Positions 21,174 to 60,303 of a stretch of DNA of 64,000 nucleotides are shown here, one piece after another. The stretch's first letter is position 1, and every line of letters starts with the position of its first letter. The notes under the pieces were generated by a model that had not been told where the DNA came from, ran no database searches, and saw only the letters and a list, made by a program, of their open reading frames with translations. A program made the translations under genes and the position numbers. Origin of the DNA: Diadema antillarum (lineage: Eukaryota); NCBI RefSeq assembly GCF_040938485.1, contig NW_027271264.1, positions 620,001 to 684,000 on the forward strand, given 5' to 3'.

Positions 21174-21620
21174 CAGATGGATAGATGGATGGACGGATGA
21201 ATTGGCGGGCATACAGATTGATGAACATACGGATGGATGANNNNNNNNNNNNNNNNNNNNNNNNNNNNNNNNNNNNNNNNNNNNNNNNNNNNNNNNNNNN
21301 NNNNNNNNNNNNNNNNNNNNNNNNNNNNNNNNNNNNNNNNNNNNNNNNNNNNNNNNNNNNNNNNNNNNNNNNNNNNNNNNNNNNNNNNNNNNNNNNNNNN
21401 NNNNNNNNNNNNNNNNNNNNNNNNNNNNNNNNNNNNNNNNNNNNNNNNNNNNNNNNNNNNNNNNNNNNNNNNNNNNNNNNNNNNNNNNNNNNNNNNNNNN
21501 NNNNCTGGCAGAATGAATGACTGAACATCTGGATGACTGTCTGACTGGATTGACTAACCACTTCTGGTCTTTATCCCCGAGGGTTGGGCAAAAATGGATT
21601 GATTGACTGGCTGATTATTC
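21174..21620. repeat. Degenerate (ATGG/GACT)n-like repeat spanning the assembly gap
   Basis: Tetranucleotide-like repeats on both sides of the N run. Confidence 0.7.
21241..21504. other. Assembly gap (264 N)
   Basis: Direct reading. Confidence 1.
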
Positions 21621-44605: not shown

Positions 44606-45262
44606 CGTAGGCGGTCATCCAAACCGTTGTATATCCCAATTTTCCATCAAATTTTCGATTTTGAGATTTCCAGTCATTTCGATAGTGGACATTCCGTTAT
44701 ACATACTGTGAAATTTTTAGTTTCTAATTTTATGTAATTTTTGGTGTAATTATTATTTTTATAGAGCCTTGTCATTTCATTTTGTTCATTTCCCCGATGG
44801 TGCGCGTATTAAAAAACAATGATATGCCGTCCTCTCCTATATACAACGGTTTGGATGACCGCAAACACGGTGCGTGCGGTCACAAACCTTCGTATGTCGC
44901 GCACATTGACTTGGCGCATAATAGAAGTGATATATGAAAGTTCGGTGACCACAAGTACTGTGAGCACGGTCAACAAAACTGTCGTATACATGGTAAATGA
45001 CAACAGTCTTCACAAACCGAAAAAACATGCATGTCGCTCTCTTGCGATTTCTTGCATAATTCCTAACAATACAATTCAACAAAGACATCACATGTTAGAG
45101 TAAGAATTAAAGTCTGACGTGTTACAATAAAAAATAATTGGAAATGCCAGTAATAAAAGAGTGCCATAATGATTGAAAAATGGGTAAACTTCCACGCGAT
45201 TATCTCGAAATGTCATTCTTGCGCGTAAATTGCATATACAACAGTTCTGATAAACGCTGACG
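44606..45262. mobile_element. Short degenerate relative of the 51291-59949 Sola1-like element
   Basis: Left end CGTAGGCGGTCATCCAAACCGTTGTATAT resembles the large element's TIR. The right end reverse-complements to CGTCAGCGTTTATCAGAACTGTTGTATAT. Flanks are ATAC/ATAA; inverted motif pair at ~44839-44900. Confidence 0.7.
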
Positions 45263-50163: not shown

Positions 50164-50544
50164 TTAAGATCGCAATCTTTCAGATTTTGAAGTTTTACCA
50201 GTGTTACCGCAAACTTCCCGCCAAACTTCTTGCGAAACTTTCCACTCCAACTAGGAATATTTCCCCTACCTCCGCCAAACTTCTCAATCTTTTGCCAGCG
50301 TGATCACTAGAAACTGAAACTTTGCGATCTCTGTCACGTGACCAGTCAACCACCTGTTTGCAGGCAGTACCTCTAAAGCACACGGTCATTGTGATGAACA
50401 GGAGTGTATTGTGACATAACAATCACCAGCTGTCAGACGGTGTACTCTTTCTTGCACAAGCGTACTAGTGACCCACACTTCTTGATCCAAAGATCGAGAA
50501 GTTTGGCTGCCTCTGTGACTAGACGACAAAAGATCTTGAAAACT

Positions 50545-50709
50545 CAGGCGCGGATCCAGGAATTCTGTAAAGGGCGGGGGACTCAAGTAACATTTCTGGT
50601 GCCACTTCCGGGTTTCATTTCATTTTTTCTTTTTATTTTTTTTGTTTTTAACAAAAAAAAATAAAGGGGGGGCATGTGCCGGTTGTGCCCCCCTCTGGAT
50701 CCGCCAGTG
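50545..50709. mobile_element. hAT-like MITE (CAGGCGCGGATCC...GGATCCGCCAGTG) nested in 50042
   Basis: Imperfect TIR with GGATCC; it interrupts the host's right terminal repeat. Possible degenerate duplication AAAACT/AAGATT. Confidence 0.75.
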
Positions 50710-51557
50710 AAGATTTCACGATCTTAAACTTCTTGATCTTTTGCCAATGTGACCGCGGCTATTGATACAGGTACCTTGGTACATGCATGAACCTGTTAAG
50801 TGGCAGGCTGGCCTGGAATCCACTCACAAAGTGAATGAGTGTCATGCAGGTTCAGGTTTGATTCAAGTGACTAGGGCAATAAAATGCATTAGCTAGAACA
50901 TTCTACAAGCAACAGCATGATTTTGACTGTCCACTGTCATTCATTTGAATAATTCATGTCATTGCAATGACCATCAATATTGCCAATATTAATATCAATA
51001 GTACCACTGTCATTATTATTCTTGATATCATCATTACTATTAAAATTATATTGGTAACTGTTTACCGGTACATCATTATCACTAGATGTTTGTAGTTGTT
51101 TATGTAATAGAAAAAATTTCTATTGATGTAATCATTCTCATGATGGAATACATTTATGGTATGTCATGTATGACAGACATTTAACATGGCAACTGGGGAA
51201 ATATCACTTCTCTCTTTCTATCAAATCCATCACCCCACCCCCTCCTCGCTTACGGCAATACTTCATGAAAAATGGATCTACATGATAAATCGTCGGCGAC
51301 CATCCGAACCGTCGTATCTGTCAGCGGCGTGCGAGAACACGTTTTCGAGAAAAACGCGTTTGAAGTTTGGTGGTCCTTTGAAGTCTAGTGTAAAGAAATT
51401 TCTTGCTTTTATTCCCGATCTTTTTATATGAAAAGAAAGGCAAATTCCAGACGATTCGTATAATATATGTATTTAAAATCATGTATGAATAAAACTAATG
51501 CTACGTTCACAAAAAGAAAGGCCTCCGCACAGGAAGAGTCGAAAAACAGGTATACAA

Positions 51558-51663
51558 CGGTTCGGAGATCGCACTCTCAGTACGCGCGGTCATCCGAACT
51601 GACGTATCGGGGTGATACGTCAGTTTGCTGAACGCGCGTACCGAAAGTGCGATCTCCGAACCG
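51558..51663. repeat. Subterminal ~105-bp palindrome built from TIR-core motifs
   Basis: CGGTTCGGAGATCGCACT...AACTGACGTATC / GATACGTCAGTT...AGTGCGATCTCCGAACCG. Confidence 0.85.
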
Positions 51664-53604
51664 ACGTATCCTATTCTTATAACACGCGCGTCTATGCGAT
51701 ATGCATGGTTACGTGGTATTTATCTGTAAAACGAGTGATTTCGTGCATATTTTTGTGTAAATGCAACTATTCTGTGTCATAATTTCATAAGATGTAGTAC
51801 AAATATGTCCAAGGTCCAGTTTTGTCATGCATGATGAAACACTGGTAGGGGAGGGGGAGATTCCTCTGCAGATTTTTTGTTTGTTTGTTTTGTTTTGTTT
51901 TGTTTTTTGACATGAATTACGCTTCAGGCATCAGACGAGAGTTCCTTTGATGTAAAAAACAAACAAACAGACAGACAAACAAACAATCAAAAAACCCACT
52001 CCATGTTTAGGACACATTATCTTTAATCAGTTTGTATCTAATTTGTATCACGCAAAAAGTGGTTATACATGTATTGTGAAAGAGGTGGGGCCTATGAAAT
52101 TATTGCTTTTTCATTGCAGCCTGCCTCTTCTTTTTCCTCTCATTTCATCTTCTCACTCCTCTCCTCCATGGACCTCTTCTCTTTCCCTTGCAACGCTTTA
52201 ACCCTCTCTCCCACTCTCCAATACTGTAAACAAAAACCAAAATCACACATCCAAGCCTTGCTATTCTTTGTGATAATTCATGCCGCAATCATGACTGCAA
52301 TGACCTAACTTTCATTCTTTCTAAGCTGCCATGATGAATACTGTACATTTTAACCCATGAATAAAGATTTTCTTTTATAGCTTACATGCATGGCAGACAT
52401 AATTCATGATCATTCAGTTGGGTAAAACTCAATTATCAGCTTGCTCATCGGAAATAACATGCAAAAAATTTACTTAGCCACACGTCTGTCTCACATTATT
52501 GTTTTTTTTTTATATAATTATACATGTATATACGTTCAGGACTCTGAAACAGATGCAAATTAATTTTCTACGCAGAAACATCCACACACACAAACATGGA
52601 TTGTACTTGTTCACACAAATAATAAAAGGTGTATTGTCCTACAGACTTAAATGATATTCAAGTAGTACTATGAATATCATTTCACTTCCAATTATATATG
52701 CTGACATTTTAGTGTGCATAATACACTATGATTTCCTCACGATATGAGATCACAGTACATAGAAGAGAAAAACAAAACAAAACAAAGAAAGTGAGTCTTG
52801 AGACAAGGCTGCATTAAAATGCAGCAATATTTATTTCAAAATCAATCCATATCTCACATCCAAAAAGAAAAGAAAAGGAATGAACATGTCCTTAAATACA
52901 ATGGTAAAATTTCATTAAAAATTTCTGAATTTACAGAATGATCAAGATGTCTGTGGTAAAATAGATATTATTCAAATTCATTGATAATGAACATGTCCTT
53001 TAATACAATGGTTACATTTCCTCGAACATTTTTAAATGTACAAATCAAAATGTCTTTGGTTAAATAGATATTGATCTAAATCAATTGTTAAACCGATTTT
53101 AACATGAAAAAATTGTACACAATACAGTTTATATTGAAAAACATTCTGAAACATTCATCAGATGGAAGTAGCTTACAGCAGAAGGCAACTTCCTCCTAAT
53201 ATCAGTGAATCTCTAATAACTCAGGTCTTAGGGCTAAAAAAAAAAAGTACATTGTATGATTTGAGTTGTTATTATGTGCATGTTTGTGATTGTACTTTCA
53301 TTTCGATATAACGGTAATATCTACGCAACGGTCCTACAGAAATCAAATCACATTTGGAAGGAGGAATAAAGCTGTTACATGTACATCTTTCACATGAAAA
53401 AATATGACAATTATTGTTAAAGAAATATCAAAGCTTATTATGATATCATAGAATATTTAATAGCTATAGAATAGACAAATCATAACATGGCGAATTGTGG
53501 TGGGGAGATAGTGCGGAGTGATAAATTATCAAAAATTTGAATACATAGACGAAATTGCTTTTGCATGCACAAACAACTGTAGGCACCATAGGCAAGCAAT
53601 AATT

Positions 53605-53728
53605 AGTGAGAAGTTGGTCAGAGCTGACATTTTGCTGGGATGGAACTGATGGTGCTTCATTGTTCAATTCTGGTACAAAGTGTGTATTGGTATCTCTTGA
53701 ATGCAGTCCATGTCCTTGGTGATGCCCA
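53605..53728 (-). pseudogene. Repeat exon 3f (10-bp insertion, no donor; possibly the terminal exon)
   Basis: Acceptor CATTTCCAG intact; reads VGITKDMDCIQEIPIHTLYQN*. GTGAGT is absent and the sequence runs into AT-rich, UTR-like DNA. Confidence 0.6.
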
Positions 53729-54221
53729 CTGGAAATGAAGAAAACAAAAAGGAAAACAAGATACATATGGTGCATAGATATTACATTTGTTTTATCATAT
53801 TTATCAAAAGACTGAATTTATCATTTCTTTGAAAGGACAAGATGTCATCCAGCTTACAACTCATGGTGGATCCATGCGAGGACATATGGGGTGTAAGATG
53901 CCCTTATTGTTTTTGTTTTTTTGAACAAAATATCAACAGAGAAAACTGGAGGAAGTGCATGTGGTCCCCCCCCCCCCCCCCAGACACACACTTTACAGAA
54001 TTCCTGGACCCACCACTGACAACTGCAAAAAAAAAATAATGGTACATATTAGCCAGGATGCTACATTCTATGCTTGTGTATAGTTGATGTCATTCTTTTT
54101 ATTTGTTATTATATGACAGCAATAGCATCATTTATTCCGGATAATGGTTATTCCAACAAGATTGAGTCAGCAATATCTGGTTGGGTTTCCCGATTAGATT
54201 AAGTGCTTTACAAACACTCAC

Positions 54222-54337
54222 CAGTGAGAAGTTGCAGGTCAGAGATGACATTCTGCGGGATGGATCTGACGGTGCTTCATTGTTCAATACTAGCATTGGT
54301 ATCTCTTGAATGCAGTCCATGTCCTTGGTGATGCCAA
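54222..54337 (-). pseudogene. Repeat exon 3e (116 bp, frameshifted, mosaic of the two subunit types)
   Basis: Splice sites intact; the 5' half is like 3b (TKDMDCI) and the middle like 3a/3c (PMLVLN). Confidence 0.7.
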
Positions 54338-55084
54338 CTGGAAATGAAGAAACAAAAAGAAAAACAAATGCATATGGTGCACAAACATTTTATTTGTTTC
54401 CATCATATTCATTGAAAGATTGACTTTATAATTTCTTTTACTAAGATTAACCTTTTAATAGCACAATTTTCAGGTAGCCCTTTGTAAATGTCCACAAACA
54501 AGAATTTTTTTTTTTGCCCAGCAGAGATCGGACAGATTGGTGATCTGCATCAATGCAAAAGCAGTCAAACGGTACATGCATCCTCATTTGAAAATTGCTC
54601 ATAGATTATCACTCAGCTTGGAAGGTCCAGGTACAAATGGCAGACAAGCTACATTCTCCAGTTGTGTGTTAGCCATTTGCTACAATATGACAAGAAGGAT
54701 AACATGTCATCCAGATTGCAACCAGTGGTTAATTCATGTGGGGCACATCAGGTGTAAGATGCCCTTTATTTTTGTCTTTTTTTTAACAAAAGAAATAAAC
54801 AGAAAAACTGGAGGACGTGCGTGTGGTCCCTCCTCCCCCCCCCCCCCCAACTTTCACAGAATTCCTGGACCCACCCCTGACAACACAAACACTGGTACAT
54901 GGTAGCCAGGATACTACATTCTTTGCTTGTGTGTAGTTTATGTCATCCTTTTTAATTGCTATTAAAGTGTATAAGACAGCAATAGCATCATTTAATCTTA
55001 ATTACTGATGGATATTCCAACAAGATTAATGCAGCAATATCTGGTTGGGTTTCCCAACAAGATTAAGGCTTTACAAACACTCAC

Positions 55085-55176
55085 CAGTTAGAAGTTGGTC
55101 AGAGCTGACATTGCTTCGTTGTTCAATTCTGGTACTGGTATCTCGTGAATGCAGTCCATGTCCTTGGTGATGCCAA
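55085..55176 (-). pseudogene. Repeat exon 3d (92 bp, 22-bp deletion, frameshift to TAA)
   Basis: Splice sites intact; 22 bp shorter than 3b between GAAGCA and ATGTC. Confidence 0.7.
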
Positions 55177-55662
55177 CTGGAAATGGAGAAAACAAAAAGA
55201 AAAAGAAAATACACATGGTGCATAACTATTACATTTTTTTAAAAATCATATTTATTGAAAGATTGACTTTATCATTTCTTTCAAAGGACAAAATGTCATC
55301 CAGATTACAACCCATGGTGGATCCATGCGGGGTCACATAGGGTTTAAGATGCCCCCCCCCCCTTTTTTTAGCAAAAAAATTAACAGAGAAAAACTGGAGG
55401 ACATGCGTGTGGTCCCCCCCCCCCCCTCCCCAATTTGCAGAATTCCTGGACCCACCCCTGAAAACTGCAAAAAATACTGGTACATGGGAGCCAGGATGCT
55501 ACATTCTATGCTTGTGTATAGTTGATGTCATTCTTTTTATTTGCTATTATATGGCAACAATAGCGTAATTTAATCCGGATTACTAAGGGATATTCCAACA
55601 GGATTGATTCAGCAATATCTGGTTGGGTTTCCCAACAAGGTTAAGGCTGTACTAACACTCAC

Positions 55663-55779
55663 CATTGAGAAGTTGGTCAGAGCTGATATTCTGCTGGGGT
55701 GAATCTGACGGTGCTCCTTCATTGTTCAATACTAGCATTGGTATCTCAGGAAGGCAGCTGATGTCTTTTTTTATGCCAA
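55663..55779 (-). CDS. Repeat exon 3c (117 bp, phase 1-1, open)
   Basis: CATTTACAG|...|GTGAGT; VGIKKDISCLPEIPMLVLNNEGAPSDSPQQNISSDQLLN. Confidence 0.7.
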
Positions 55780-56519
55780 CTGTAAATGAGGAAAACAAAA
55801 TATACATAGCCTATGTTTATTTTATTGTTTCTATCAGGTTTTTTTCAAAGATTGAATTTATCTTTTTTATATTAAGATTAACCTTTTAATACCACAATTT
55901 TCAGAAAGCCCTATTTAAATGTCCACAAACAAGAGGGTTTTTTTTGCCCATCAGCAGAGATCGGACAGACTGGTGATCTGCATTAATGCAAAAGTAGTCA
56001 AACGGTACATGCATCCTCATTTGAGAATTGCTCATATAAATTATCACTCTGCTTGGAAGGTCCAGATACAATTTGCAGACAAGCTACATTCTCCAGTTGT
56101 GTGTTAGCCATTTGCTACAATATGACAAGAAGGATAACATGTCATCCAGATTGCAACCAGTGGTTGATTCATGTGGGGCACATCAGGTGTAAGATACCCT
56201 TTATTTTTGTCTTTGTTTTAAACAAAAGAAATGAACAGAAAAACTGGACGACATGCATGTGGTCCCCCCCCCCCCCCCAACTTCACAGAATTCCTGGACC
56301 CACCCCTGACAACTGCAAAAAACACTGGCACATCGTAGCCAGGATACTACATTCTTTGCTTGTGTGTAGTTTATGTCATCCTTTTTAATTGCTATTAAAG
56401 TGTATAAGACAGCAATAGCATCATTTAATCTTAATCACTATTATGGATATTCCAACAAGATTAATGCAGCAATATCTGGTTGGGTTTCCCAACAAGATTA
56501 AGGCTTTACAAACACTCAC

Positions 56520-56633
56520 CAGTTAGAAGTTGGTCATAGCTGACATTTTGCTGGGATGGATCTCCTGGTGCTTCGTTGTTCAATTCTGGTATTGGTATCT
56601 CGTGAATGCAGTCCATGTCCTTGGTGATGCCAA
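56520..56633 (-). CDS. Repeat exon 3b (114 bp, phase 1-1, open)
   Basis: CATTTCCAG|...|GTGAGT; VGITKDMDCIHEIPIPELNNEAPGDPSQQNVSYDQLLT. Confidence 0.7.
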
Positions 56634-57106
56634 CTGGAAATGAAGAAAACACAAAGAAAAAGAAAATACACATGGTGCATAAATATTGCATTTTTAAAAA
56701 AATCATATTTATTGAAAGATTGGCTTAATCATTTCTTTGTCATCCAGATTACAACCCATGGTGGATCCGCGCAGGGACACATGGGGTTTAAGATGCCCTT
56801 TTTTTAAACAAAAAATAAACAGAGAAAAACTGGAGGATGTGCATATGTTCCCCCCCCCCCCCCCCCACCAATTTACAGAATTCCTTGACCCATCCCTGAC
56901 AACTGCAAAAAATACTGGTACATGGTAGCCAGGATGCTACAGTCTTTGCTTGTGTATAGTTGATGTCATTCTTTTTATTTGCTATTATATAACAGCAATA
57001 GCATAATTTAATCCGGATTACTAATTGATATTCCAACAAGATTGATTCAACCATATCTGCTTGGGTTTCTGAACAAGATTACTAGTAAGGCTTTACAAAC
57101 ACTCAC

Positions 57107-57223
57107 CATTGAGAAGTTGGTCAGAGCTGACATTCTGCTGGGATGGATCTAACGGTTCTCCTTCACTGTTCAATACTAGCATTGGTATCTCTAGAATGCA
57201 GCTGATGTCCTTTTTGATGCCAA
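57107..57223 (-). CDS. Repeat exon 3a (117 bp, phase 1-1, open)
   Basis: CATTTACAG|...|GTGAGT; VGIKKDISCILEIPMLVLNSEGEPLDPSQQNVSSDQLLN. Confidence 0.7.
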
Positions 57224-58053
57224 CTGTAAATGAGGAAAACAAAATATACATAGTGCATACATTTTACACTGTTACTATCCTATTTTTTTTTTAAGATGAT
57301 TTTTTTTTAAAATTAAGATTAACCTTTTAATACCACATTTTCAGATAGCCCTATGTAAATGTCCACAAACAAGAGTTTTAATTTTGCCCATCAGCAGAGA
57401 TCTGACAGACTGTGGTGATCTGCATTAGATGCAAAAGCAGTCAAGCGGTACATGCATCCTCTTTCCACAGTCAATTGCATGTGCTTATGAAGAATACAAA
57501 AACATTGGAAGTGAGGCACAAAAATATCATTTGCTGATAGGCTTACAAACTCTTTTGTTACGTATAGGGCACCCGAATGGGGTCAGTAAGCCAAAATTCT
57601 TTAAACTCAGCCTTGCTGGCTACACACATAGATTTTCAGTTTTGCAGCAAAACAAGGCATTATGAAATTGGAAAAAGTAACTAACACAAAATACAAGCAG
57701 ATGTGACACAGAAAAAGAAAAGAAACTGATAGAAGGTCTAATCTGTTCATTAAAGTTTTTTTTTTTTTGTAGGCATAACACAAATAAACATGAATTAAGG
57801 CTACACAAGTACACGCTCATGTCTTTATTGTGAAAACTTGGTATACCAGGTTGTGCTGTCTATGAGTTGACACCATGGAAACCTTATATACCAGGCACTA
57901 CTTCATTGCATTCATACAGTATGGAGTAAGCTACTTCTAACATTGCAGCACAGTTATGAAGTTATTAGAGGCATTGAATAAACACACACACACTATACAC
58001 TGTCCATACTTTTTACTACAAGTATGTATTCGTTTGTGTGCGCACAATCTTAC

Positions 58054-58350
58054 CTAATTTCGCCAGGTAAATGCTGTCATCATCGTCATAATCAGAAGTA
58101 TTATCTTCGTCACTGCTGTCTGCGGTGCTTGTGTTTCCATCATCGCTACTGCTTTCAGAATTCTTTCCCCCATACACAGCAGTAACTGTGCCTTTCCACA
58201 GTTTCCTGTGCCATCGCATTGACACACGAACTCCAAGTCGTGGGAAGCATGCCCTTCCTGAATTTCAGCTGATCATCAGCTACGGTATTCCTTGTACCAT
58301 CTTTGTCCCAAAGGACTTCAACATCTGTTGGTTTCCCTGAGGACAAAGAG
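58054..58350 (-). pseudogene. Exon 2: Trp-containing module plus acidic linker, with one +1 frameshift near 58235
   Basis: Acceptor TTTTTGTTTGTTACAG|, donor TTAG|GTAAGA. The exon is 297 bp, one base over a phase-2 to phase-1 exon. Removing one T gives SLSSGKPTDVEVLWDKDGTRNTVADDQLKFRKGMLPTTGVRVSMRWHRKLWKGTVTAVYGGKNSESSSDDGNTSTADSSDEDNTSDYDDDDSIYLAKL. Confidence 0.75.
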
Positions 58351-59614
58351 CTGTAACAAACAAAAACAAAAACATTCACTACAAGTGTACTAAAAATATA
58401 TTTTTTAATTTTAGCAGAAATGTTTTACCTCAAGCCTATCTAGTGGTCTATTTTTACATTGATCATAAAAATGCAAAAGCACAATTCAACTCATATTATA
58501 AACGGATAGAGGGCGAAGATCCCCTGTGCTTATGGTACTGCAAAACTACTCTCTAGAATGTGTGGGCACCTATAGCCTAGCTAGGCTAGATCTGACAATT
58601 GGAACATTGCATTAAGACCTCAATTTATATATCTTAATTGTAGAACATCAACATATTACTATTAGATATCACAGGAGGGGCTTACTCAAGTACTGCCCTC
58701 TGGCCTGTTAACACACTAAAGCCTTCATTGCAGTGATTTCAATATTATGGAGACTTGGCACTCACAGCGACATAAAAATGCATGCGATAAAAATTCATAC
58801 TCAGTACCGTGTGCGGTACCGTACAAAGCATTTGCAGTTGGCTAGATCTCTGAACAACACACATGTATTTATGGGCCAGCATAATCTAATCCTACTCCTA
58901 GAGTCCTAGGAATCCTAGTATCAGATGAATTTACAGATGTTGGTAATTTATAATCGTTCATTTTACTATAGCCAGTATAGCCTATACTAGGCCCTTCTAC
59001 TACTAGATCCTTGGCTTACATTGGCAAATTCACATGAGATACATTACACTCAGATTTGGGTGTTTTTCTTTGTGTGTGTTTGAAAGCTTGGGGCTCAATC
59101 GGCCATAAAAACATTATAAGTAAGTAGAACCTATCATCAGAACTCTAGGGTCCTACACTCAATGATGAACCAGCGATTAGCGGCTCTAAATTGTTGGCTG
59201 TGACTACGACTCTACGTAGTTAGACTCGTCTAGTAATCTCGTACTTTTTGTGGTAATTCCCAAACAACTCACCCAGAAGTGTTAACAGTTTGGCATTGCC
59301 CACACCCACTACGTATGAGGTCCGTATATGGACCATAAGCACATAAAGCCAACTCAATGAGATCATTGTGAACGTTGTTTTCTTCTAGATTAGTAAGGGT
59401 CTATGATTTTAAACCCTACTAGAGTATCCCTTTGTACCCACATATTTATCTATACACAGGACTACACCTAACAACACGACGAAATATTTGGGGAAACCCA
59501 CGACAATCTGCGTATTTATCTTGACAAGTGACAATCTTATGGATAGAACTTGCTTGGGTCTGTTCATTTTAATTGAAATCGCATGATTTCATAGCTACTC
59601 ATAATAAAACTCAC

Positions 59615-59646
59615 CGGTCCTGGGGAGGGTCCAGTTGACGCTCCAT
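59615..59646 (-). CDS. Exon 1 of the transposon-borne gene (MERQLDPPQD-R)
   Basis: ACG-ATG-G start context; ends CG|GTGAGT (phase 2), which matches the phase of the exon 2 acceptor. Confidence 0.65.
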
Positions 59647-60303
59647 CGTCTGCTTCTGCCAGTTCTGGCTGATCCGGGGCGATACGACACCTTCACTGAA
59701 CGCGACTCGAAGTTTCGCGTCCACCCGAACCGACGTATAGCGATACGTCGGTTCGGATGAACGCCTTCAGCCAATTCGCGTTCAGGCAAAATGACGTATA
59801 TCAAATTTCTCTGTTAAAAACACAAAATCCGGTTCCAAAATTTTGTGAGTAGAAAGAGTGTGTGCTGGGCTTTCTTAAAACGGCAAAATTTGAAATTCGA
59901 AAAATTTACCGAATTTTGACATATACGACGGTTCGGATGGTCGTCGACGAAATAGCACAGGAACATCATGTTAGTGGGACATCGATTGTTATGTACCATC
60001 AGTTTACATTGCTCTAGTTGCACATGCAATTAACTGCTGTTCTTCTATACATCAGAACAACTTCTTCTTCTTCTTCTTCTTTTTTTTTGACCAACACTTT
60101 GGATCTGTGAATAAGGAGACATGAACATGAAATAAGAATATGAGGAAGGACATGTTAAAATTGGGATAAAATAAGAATAAAAGAAGGGCATTCACATTCA
60201 AGAAATGGCTACTGTGACAATGATAACATGACACCAGGTGTACAGTTGGGTGGGGGAGGGGGGAGGGGTGTGGGGGGGGGGGGGGGAGAGACCAATAAAA
60301 GCT

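What the first reader, a model, noticed from the sequence alone, without database searches (positions are those of the whole stretch)
51291..59949. 8.7-kb Sola1-like transposon carrying a multi-exon gene but no visible transposase core
Seen: 31/33-identical TIRs, an exact AAAT TSD, and between them a minus-strand gene. Its ATG lies ~300 bp inside the right TIR, and its splice phases (2, 1, 1, 1...) join correctly from exon 1 through the repeat exons. No ORF or remnant of a DDD/E catalytic domain is visible in the remaining ~2.3 kb. Known: 4-bp AWWT TSDs typify Sola1. Inference: this is either a deletion derivative that kept and amplified the 5' exons of a transposase gene, or a Pack-type element carrying an accessory or captured gene. 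The six-frame track misses it because the exons are short.
Basis: partly seen in the sequence, partly recalled or inferred. Interest (0 to 1): 0.9.

Follow-up and report, generated by a model that had tools for sequence, protein, structure and literature searches.

The report
Defective cut-and-paste transposon with decayed gene
This is a real 8.7-kb cut-and-paste DNA transposon that has lost any transposase, and the multi-exon gene inside it is broken, so it is an ordinary dead-cargo mobile element, not a new kind of gene carrier.

Summary
The anatomy is real. 33-nt inverted ends at 51291-51323 and 59917-59949 match at 31 of 33 positions, and AAAT flanks both sides. A 15-nt motif recurs seven times in the two end regions.

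A second, CpG-decayed 657-bp copy at 44606-45262 has both end types fused. So this is a transposon family that produces internal-deletion derivatives.

- Exon 2 has a +1 frame break at the C-run 58244-58242, which leads to a stop at 58157-58155.
- Three of the six repeat exons are damaged.
- The intact duplicates differ in a neutral pattern.
- No transposase ORF or domain was found.

Exon 2 has one true homologue among 1.84 billion proteins. It is an unbroken 123-aa ORF on a metagenome contig, with no Pfam or PDB match.

The ends are CpG-rich (observed/expected 1.25-2.0) and the interior is CpG-poor (0.1-0.5). I read this as selection on the ends only, in a lineage moved in trans.

Assignment to Sola1 rests only on the 4-bp AWWT-type duplication. 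Whether the gene is a transposase remnant or captured DNA stays open. Two other notes of this scan cover parts of the same stretch.

The parts
51287..51290 (.). Left target-site duplication AAAT
   Evidence: Read directly; identical to 59950-59953
51291..51323 (+). Left terminal inverted repeat, 33 nt
   Evidence: 31/33 complementary to 59917-59949
51291..51812 (+). Family-specific left end region. It is CpG-rich and holds motif copies at 51303, 51552(-), 51593 and 51655.
   Evidence: nhmmer aligns positions 80-657 of the 657-bp copy to 51812-51291, E 8.9e-13. Motif map. CpG o/e 1.25-2.0.
51813..53603 (.). Interior with no recognisable coding sequence. It holds microsatellites and a 107-bp repeat present 1.8 times.
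   Evidence: No ORF over 88 aa in six frames. TRF results.
53604..57690 (-). Tandem array of six intron-plus-exon units. Long units (~860 bp) and short units (~585 bp) alternate, giving a ~1.44-kb higher-order period. Each intron holds a copy of the MITE seen solo at 50544-50710.
53604..53728 (-). Repeat exon 8, broken: 11-nt insertion, in-frame stop, no GT donor
54222..54337 (-). Repeat exon 7, broken: 116 nt, 1-nt deletion plus 3-nt insertion
55085..55176 (-). Repeat exon 6, broken: 92 nt, 22-nt deletion
55663..55779 (-). Repeat exon 5, intact: 117 nt, phase 1 at both ends
56520..56633 (-). Repeat exon 4, intact: 114 nt
57107..57223 (-). Repeat exon 3, intact: 117 nt
57367..57852 (.). Dispersed repeat inside intron 2. 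It is 67% identical to 31617-32108 in the opposite orientation.
58054..58350 (-). Exon 2: Trp-rich module plus acidic tail. It has a +1 frame break at C-run 58244-58242 and a premature TGA at 58157-58155.
   Evidence: Frame A aligns to P0003 residues 1-45 and frame B to residues 45-119. Sequence.
59615..59646 (-). Exon 1 coding part: ATG plus 32 nt, then a GTGAGT donor
59713..59949 (-). Family-specific right end region. It is CpG-rich, holds a motif palindrome at 59724-59757, and is the presumed promoter and 5'UTR.
   Evidence: nhmmer aligns positions 2-261 of the 657-bp copy to 59948-59713, E 8.8e-07..
59917..59949 (-). Right terminal inverted repeat, 33 nt
59950..59953 (.). Right target-site duplication AAAT
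44606..45262 (-). Second family member: a 657-bp CpG-decayed internal-deletion copy in the opposite orientation. Its flanks are ATAC and ATAA.

Best explanation
This is a non-autonomous member of a cut-and-paste TIR transposon family.

A transposase made elsewhere in the genome, most likely of the Sola1 type, would recognise the 33-nt ends and the repeated 15-nt subterminal motif TCCGAACCGWCGTAT. It would excise the element and reinsert it with a 4-nt staggered cut, here at AAAT.

The interior is the decayed 5' part of an intron-containing gene transcribed from the element's right end:
- exon 1;
- exon 2, which encodes an orphan Trp-rich module;
- a short phase-1 exon whose intron-plus-exon unit was tandemly duplicated to six copies before this copy inserted.

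Only the ends have been kept by selection for mobility; the interior drifts.

Shown: the ends, the TSD, a second family copy, the exon anatomy, the breaks, and the neutral divergence of the duplicates. Inferred: mobilisation in trans, the Sola1 type of the transposase, and that the gene was the element's own.
For: - TIRs and TSD are present.
- Seven motif copies lie only in the two end regions, against 0.04 matches expected by chance in the window.
- The 657-bp copy at 44606-45262 joins a right-type end (~260 nt) to a left-type end (~580 nt). So the main element's two ends belong to one element type.
- CpG o/e is 1.25-2.0 in the ends and 0.1-0.5 in the interior, with a window mean of 0.49. The old small copy shows CG decayed to TG/CA inside the same motifs.
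- The ATG lies 67 bp inside the family-specific right end.
- Exon 2 has a frame break and three of the six repeat exons are damaged.
- Exon 3 and exon 5 differ at 11 sites, spread 4/4/3 over the codon positions, giving 2 synonymous and 8 non-synonymous codons.
- Introns are about as similar as exons among the units.
- Exon 2 has an unbroken homologue, P0003, with 21 of 22 residues identical in one block. A second ORF follows P0003 at a spacing like our exon 2 to exon 3 distance.
- AWWT is called a Sola1 hallmark (PMC3845634). Sola elements have 4-bp TSDs and sizes of 2-9 kb (PMC10741241).
Against: - No transposase of any kind was seen, and no Sola profile was available. The superfamily call therefore rests on TSD length and sequence alone.
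- The second copy's flanks (ATAC/ATAA) are imperfect and do not fit AWWT.
- If targets are restricted to AWWT, an AAAT match at two independent ends has about a 1 in 4 chance, so the TSD alone is weak evidence.
- No protein joining the exon 2 module to a transposase was found among 1.84 billion representatives.
- The introns hold MITEs and a dispersed repeat and are CpG-poor like host gene bodies. That also fits captured host DNA.
Confidence: 0.6

Rival explanations
1. This is a Pack-type element: a non-autonomous transposon whose interior is a captured fragment of a host gene (promoter-proximal exons and introns), not a remnant of the element's own gene.
For: - The interior is CpG-depleted like methylated host gene bodies.
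- Its introns hold a MITE and a dispersed repeat that are also found outside the element.
- The small family copy lacks every exon.
- No transposase is linked to the exon 2 module anywhere in the database.
Against: - The ATG is only 67 bp from the family-specific end, so the captured piece would have to begin almost exactly at the gene's start and borrow the element's end as its promoter.
- The gene points inward from one end, as transposase genes do.
- No parental host gene could be searched for.
- Pack-TYPE elements are described as a plant phenomenon (PMC8903248).
Confidence: 0.25
2. The two ends come from two independent insertions (or solo ends) of the same family that happen to bracket 8.6 kb of host DNA holding a host gene fragment.
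For: With a strict AWWT target, matching 4-bp flanks occur by chance about 1 time in 4.
Against: - No partner ends exist anywhere in the 64-kb window.
- The left end is of the left type and the right end of the right type, in the correct inverted arrangement, as in the 657-bp copy.
- Both ends are equally undecayed.
Confidence: 0.05
3. The gene is alive. The exon 2 break is an assembly error, and the element's promoter and 5' exons give a spliced transcript. That transcript either uses small unrecognised exons in the left 2.3 kb or splices onward into host exons.
For: - Kozak context and splice sites are good, and three consecutive repeat exons are intact.
- Exon 2 keeps more CpG than its introns (o/e 0.77 against 0.1-0.2).
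- A 22-residue block is almost identical to P0003.
Against: - The break is in a run of only three C, a poor candidate for a homopolymer error.
- Exons 6-8 carry independent indels and a stop.
- The duplicates diverge neutrally.
- No terminal exon was found.
Confidence: 0.07

Closest known systems
Non-autonomous Sola1 elements (e.g. Sola1_NA of insects, PMC3845634)
   Same: TIR-bounded, no transposase, and a 4-bp TSD fitting AWWT. Sola elements are long (2-9 kb, some over 15 kb) with very variable termini (PMC10741241).
   Different: The termini here (CGTCG...) do not resemble the insect Sola1_NA termini printed in that paper. No Sola1 DDD transposase has been linked to this family. The second copy's flanks do not fit AWWT.
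Internal-deletion derivatives of autonomous DNA transposons (the Ds/Ac and dSpm/En-Spm pattern; from general knowledge)
   Same: Both end regions are kept, and the interior is shortened and decayed. The 5' part of the element's inward-pointing gene is retained. An even shorter sibling (657 bp) consists of the fused ends.
   Different: The autonomous parent has not been seen. The interior was enlarged by tandem duplication of a 1.44-kb intron-exon unit.
Pack-TYPE transposons (Pack-MULE, Pack-CACTA; PMC8903248)
   Same: A non-autonomous TIR element whose interior looks like gene fragments with introns.
   Different: Those are described in plants and carry fragments of identifiable host genes. 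Here no parental gene is known, and the gene starts 67 bp from the element's own end sequence.

Membership tests
Sola1 (Sola superfamily) | 4-bp target-site duplication, AWWT preference | tested here: met
   AAAT lies on both sides of the main element. AWWT is the hallmark per PMC3845634. The 657-bp copy has ATAC/ATAA, a 3 of 4 match that does not fit AWWT, so the family-level preference is unsettled.
Sola1 (Sola superfamily) | Encodes, or is mobilised by, a Sola1-clade DDD transposase | tested here: not met
   This copy has no ORF or Pfam domain of any transposase. Whether a Sola1 enzyme moves it in trans cannot be tested here. No Sola profile or genome-wide search was available.
Sola1 (Sola superfamily) | Terminal ~11 nt matching a known Sola1 family (Repbase rule for non-autonomous elements, PMC4455052) | not testable with these tools
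   Repbase was not available. The only printed Sola1 termini (PMC3845634) are unlike CGTCGGCGACC.
Ginger | TIRs ending 5'-TG...CA-3' with 4-6 bp TSD (PMC10741241) | tested here: not met
   The termini are 5'-CG...CG-3'.
Non-autonomous deletion derivative of a TIR family | Shares both end regions with other family members and lacks a transposase | tested here: met
   The 657-bp copy aligns to 51291-51812 and to 59713-59949. No transposase was found.
Pack-TYPE element | Interior derived from a host gene that still exists outside the element | not testable with these tools
   The rest of this genome could not be searched. The only homologue is one ORF on a metagenome contig whose DNA could not be fetched.

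The most novel reading that the evidence does not exclude
Exon 2's Trp-rich beta-strand module, which has no Pfam, PDB or other database relative beyond one metagenomic ORF, is a new N-terminal targeting or DNA/chromatin-binding domain. It would belong to an intron-rich Sola-type transposase, or to a transposon accessory gene. The symmetric phase-1 exon array would then be a transposon-borne expandable linker that is still spliced.
Probability: 0.1. Interest if true: 0.5.

Novelty: new member of a known kind. Interest (0 to 1): 0.25.

Why it matters
It gives a clean, annotatable family for this genome: the TIR, a 15-nt subterminal motif, the 4-bp duplication, one 8.7-kb copy and one 657-bp copy. 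It also shows that an exon-like tandem array flagged as a hidden gene is decaying transposon cargo.

If longer siblings link exon 2 to a transposase, that would add an unknown N-terminal module to Sola-type enzymes. Otherwise this is routine repeat annotation.

Tried and rejected
- Pfam on the exon 2 pieces, on exon 3 and on P0003 gave nothing above threshold.
- Word-indexed protein searches with the exon 2 ORF, with P0003 and with the exon 3 ORF found no relatives besides P0003 itself.
- The exhaustive HMMER search with 41 aa of exon 2 gave four hits. Only P0003 is real. P0001 and P0002 are bacterial repeat proteins and P0004 is a repetitive, low-complexity protein, all matched on short repeats.
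- The P0003 contig's DNA could not be fetched.
- Metagenome scans with the TIR 20-mer and with P0003 returned nothing.
- Viral contigs gave one 17-mer match, which I take as chance, and no P0003 relative.
- PDB sequence search gave nothing significant.
- AlphaFold on P0003 alone reached pLDDT 40, and on a 3-row alignment pLDDT 51. Both are too poor for a fold search, so none was run.
- The Atlas feature search gave only sub-threshold leads to PWWP, Tudor and BAH clusters. My Royal-family fold guess stays untested.
- Rfam found nothing in the window.
- Pfam on ten long ORFs elsewhere in the window found nothing.
- A search for a paralogous empty site in the window found none.
- The Bao et al. 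2009 paper is not held.
- Earlier-notes look-ups gave titles only.
Full report
**Observation**

The two ends are real.
- 51291-51323 and the reverse complement of 59917-59949 match at 31 of 33 positions.
- A 21-nt core of the repeat occurs exactly only at these two places. It occurred 0 times in 100 shuffles of the window.
- AAAT lies directly outside both ends, at 51287-51290 and 59950-59953.
- The element is 8659 bp long.

**Family**

A 15-nt motif, TCCGAACCGWCGTAT, occurs seven times in the element, always within about 400 bp of an end. Its positions are 51303, 51552(-), 51593, 51655, 59724, 59743(-) and 59923(-). Chance would give 0.04 matches in the whole window.

The same search found two decayed copies at 44618 and 44841. 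Following these showed a 657-bp element at 44606-45262.
- Its left ~260 nt align to the main element's right end, 59713-59949.
- Its right ~580 nt align to the main element's left end, 51291-51812 (nhmmer E 8.8e-07 and 8.9e-13).

It is therefore a fused-ends internal-deletion member of the same family, in the opposite orientation. Its CpGs have decayed to TG/CA. Its flanks are ATAC and ATAA, a 3 of 4 match.

This shows three things:
- The family is multi-copy.
- The main element's left and right ends are the two proper ends of one element type.
- The family-specific sequence is limited to about 520 bp at the left end and about 236 bp at the right end.

**The gene (minus strand)**

| Exon | Coordinates | Length | State |
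|---|---|---|---|
| 1 | 59646-59615 (from the ATG) | 32 nt coding | GTGAGT donor |
| 2 | 58350-58054 | 297 nt | broken |
| 3 | 57223-57107 | 117 nt | intact |
| 4 | 56633-56520 | 114 nt | intact |
| 5 | 55779-55663 | 117 nt | intact |
| 6 | 55176-55085 | 92 nt | out of frame (22-nt deletion) |
| 7 | 54337-54222 | 116 nt | out of frame (1-nt deletion plus 3-nt insertion) |
| 8 | 53728-53604 | 125 nt | in-frame stop, no GT donor |

- The ATG at 59646 has A at -3 and G at +4.
Read from the ATG, however, it runs into TGA at 58157-58155.
- The frame that leaves exon 2 in phase 1 is offset by +1.
- Alignment to the one homologue places the break at the C-run 58244-58242. Frame A matches P0003 residues 1-45 and frame B matches residues 45-119.
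- No ORF over 88 aa lies between 51291 and 53620.
- No Pfam family matched any piece.

So in this copy the gene is a pseudogene without a visible 3' end.

**The array**

Six intron-plus-exon units lie at 53604-57690. Long units (~860 bp) and short units (~585 bp) alternate, giving a ~1.44-kb higher-order repeat.
- Every unit's intron contains a copy of a MITE that also sits alone at 50544-50710, outside the element.
- The long units also carry part of a dispersed repeat, 57367-57852, which is 67% identical to 31617-32108.
- Among the units, intron identity (0.80-0.90) is about the same as exon identity (0.79-0.98).
- The two intact 117-nt exons differ at 11 sites, spread 4/4/3 over the codon positions. 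That gives 2 synonymous and 8 non-synonymous codon changes.

The duplications were DNA-level events. Since then the copies have drifted without coding constraint.

**Relatives of the gene**

An exhaustive HMMER search of 1.84 billion representative proteins with 41 residues of exon 2 gave one true hit, P0003.
- P0003 is a 123-aa ORF from a 4131-bp contig of ENA metagenome assembly ERZ26222911.
- It is unbroken.
- It is 65% identical over the first part and 57% over the second, with one block identical at 21 of 22 residues.
- It also matches across the translated intron edges, so acceptor and donor are at the same places.
- A second ORF of 60 aa follows it after 818 nt. In our element the exon 3 ORF follows the exon 2 ORF after 765 nt.
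- The contig's DNA could not be fetched.

Nothing else was found by word-indexed searches, metagenome or viral scans, Pfam or PDB. Two structure predictions were too poor to use, at pLDDT 40 and 51. The fold is therefore unassigned. The Atlas leads to PWWP, Tudor and BAH clusters are below its own threshold.

**Age and selection**

CpG observed/expected:

| Region | CpG o/e |
|---|---|
| End regions (51100-51699, 59500-60099) | 1.25-2.0 and 1.14-1.43 |
| Most of the interior | 0.1-0.5 |
| Exon 2 region | 0.77 |
| Whole window | 0.49 |

The old 657-bp copy shows that these end motifs do lose CpG once a copy sits in the genome. I infer three things from this:
- The 8.7-kb copy inserted fairly recently.
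- Its lineage has long kept only its ends under selection.
- The array, whose units differ by 10-20%, predates this insertion.

That is the expected signature of a non-autonomous lineage moved in trans.

**Classification**

| Source | What it says |
|---|---|
| PMC3845634 | An AWWT 4-bp TSD is a hallmark of Sola1. |
| PMC10741241 | Sola elements have 4-bp TSDs, DDD transposases, sizes of 2-9 kb and very variable termini. Ginger elements end TG...CA. |

The termini here are CG...CG, so Ginger is excluded. The TSD criterion for Sola1 is met by the main copy. The transposase criterion is not met in this copy and cannot be tested for the family. Sola1 is therefore the best guess, at roughly even odds, and not a demonstrated membership.

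Unchecked notes from this scan mention Sola-like elements with intron-rich transposase genes elsewhere in this genome. That makes a trans-acting source plausible, but I did not test it.

**Origin of the interior**

Two points favour a remnant of the element's own gene. The ATG is 67 bp inside the family-specific right end, and the gene points inward. Two points fit capture equally well: the interior looks like a host gene body, and no protein joins the exon 2 module to a transposase. I put the odds at about 0.6 to 0.25. A genome-wide search would settle it.

**Verdict**

This is a genuine but ordinary non-autonomous DNA transposon carrying a decayed, tandemly inflated gene fragment. The claim of correctly joining phases is not, and the interest was overrated.

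Noticed in passing
window 44606-45262: A 657-bp CpG-decayed, fused-ends member of the same transposon family, in the opposite orientation. Its flanks are ATAC and ATAA (a 3 of 4 match).
   Followed up: yes
window 50544-50710: A MITE of about 167 bp with GGATCCAG-containing inverted ends and poly-G/poly-C tracts. Copies of it sit in every intron of the tandem array, at 53992, 54853, 55434, 56282 and 56872.
   Followed up: partly
window 31617-32108 and 57367-57852: A dispersed repeat of about 490 bp, 67% identical between the two places, in opposite orientations. Part of it is also in the long units of the array.
   Followed up: partly
window 51100-51699 and 59500-60099: The element's end regions have CpG observed/expected of 1.1-2.0. 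Its interior is at 0.1-0.5 and the window mean is 0.49.
   Followed up: yes
window about 21200-21500: A run of N (264 in the window), read as X in two ORFs.
   Followed up: no
P0003 (ENA assembly ERZ26222911, 4131-bp contig): The only database relative of exon 2. It is an intact ORF at 1680-2051 of its contig, followed by a 60-aa ORF at 2869-3051. The DNA is not retrievable, and the sample's origin is unknown to me.
   Followed up: partly
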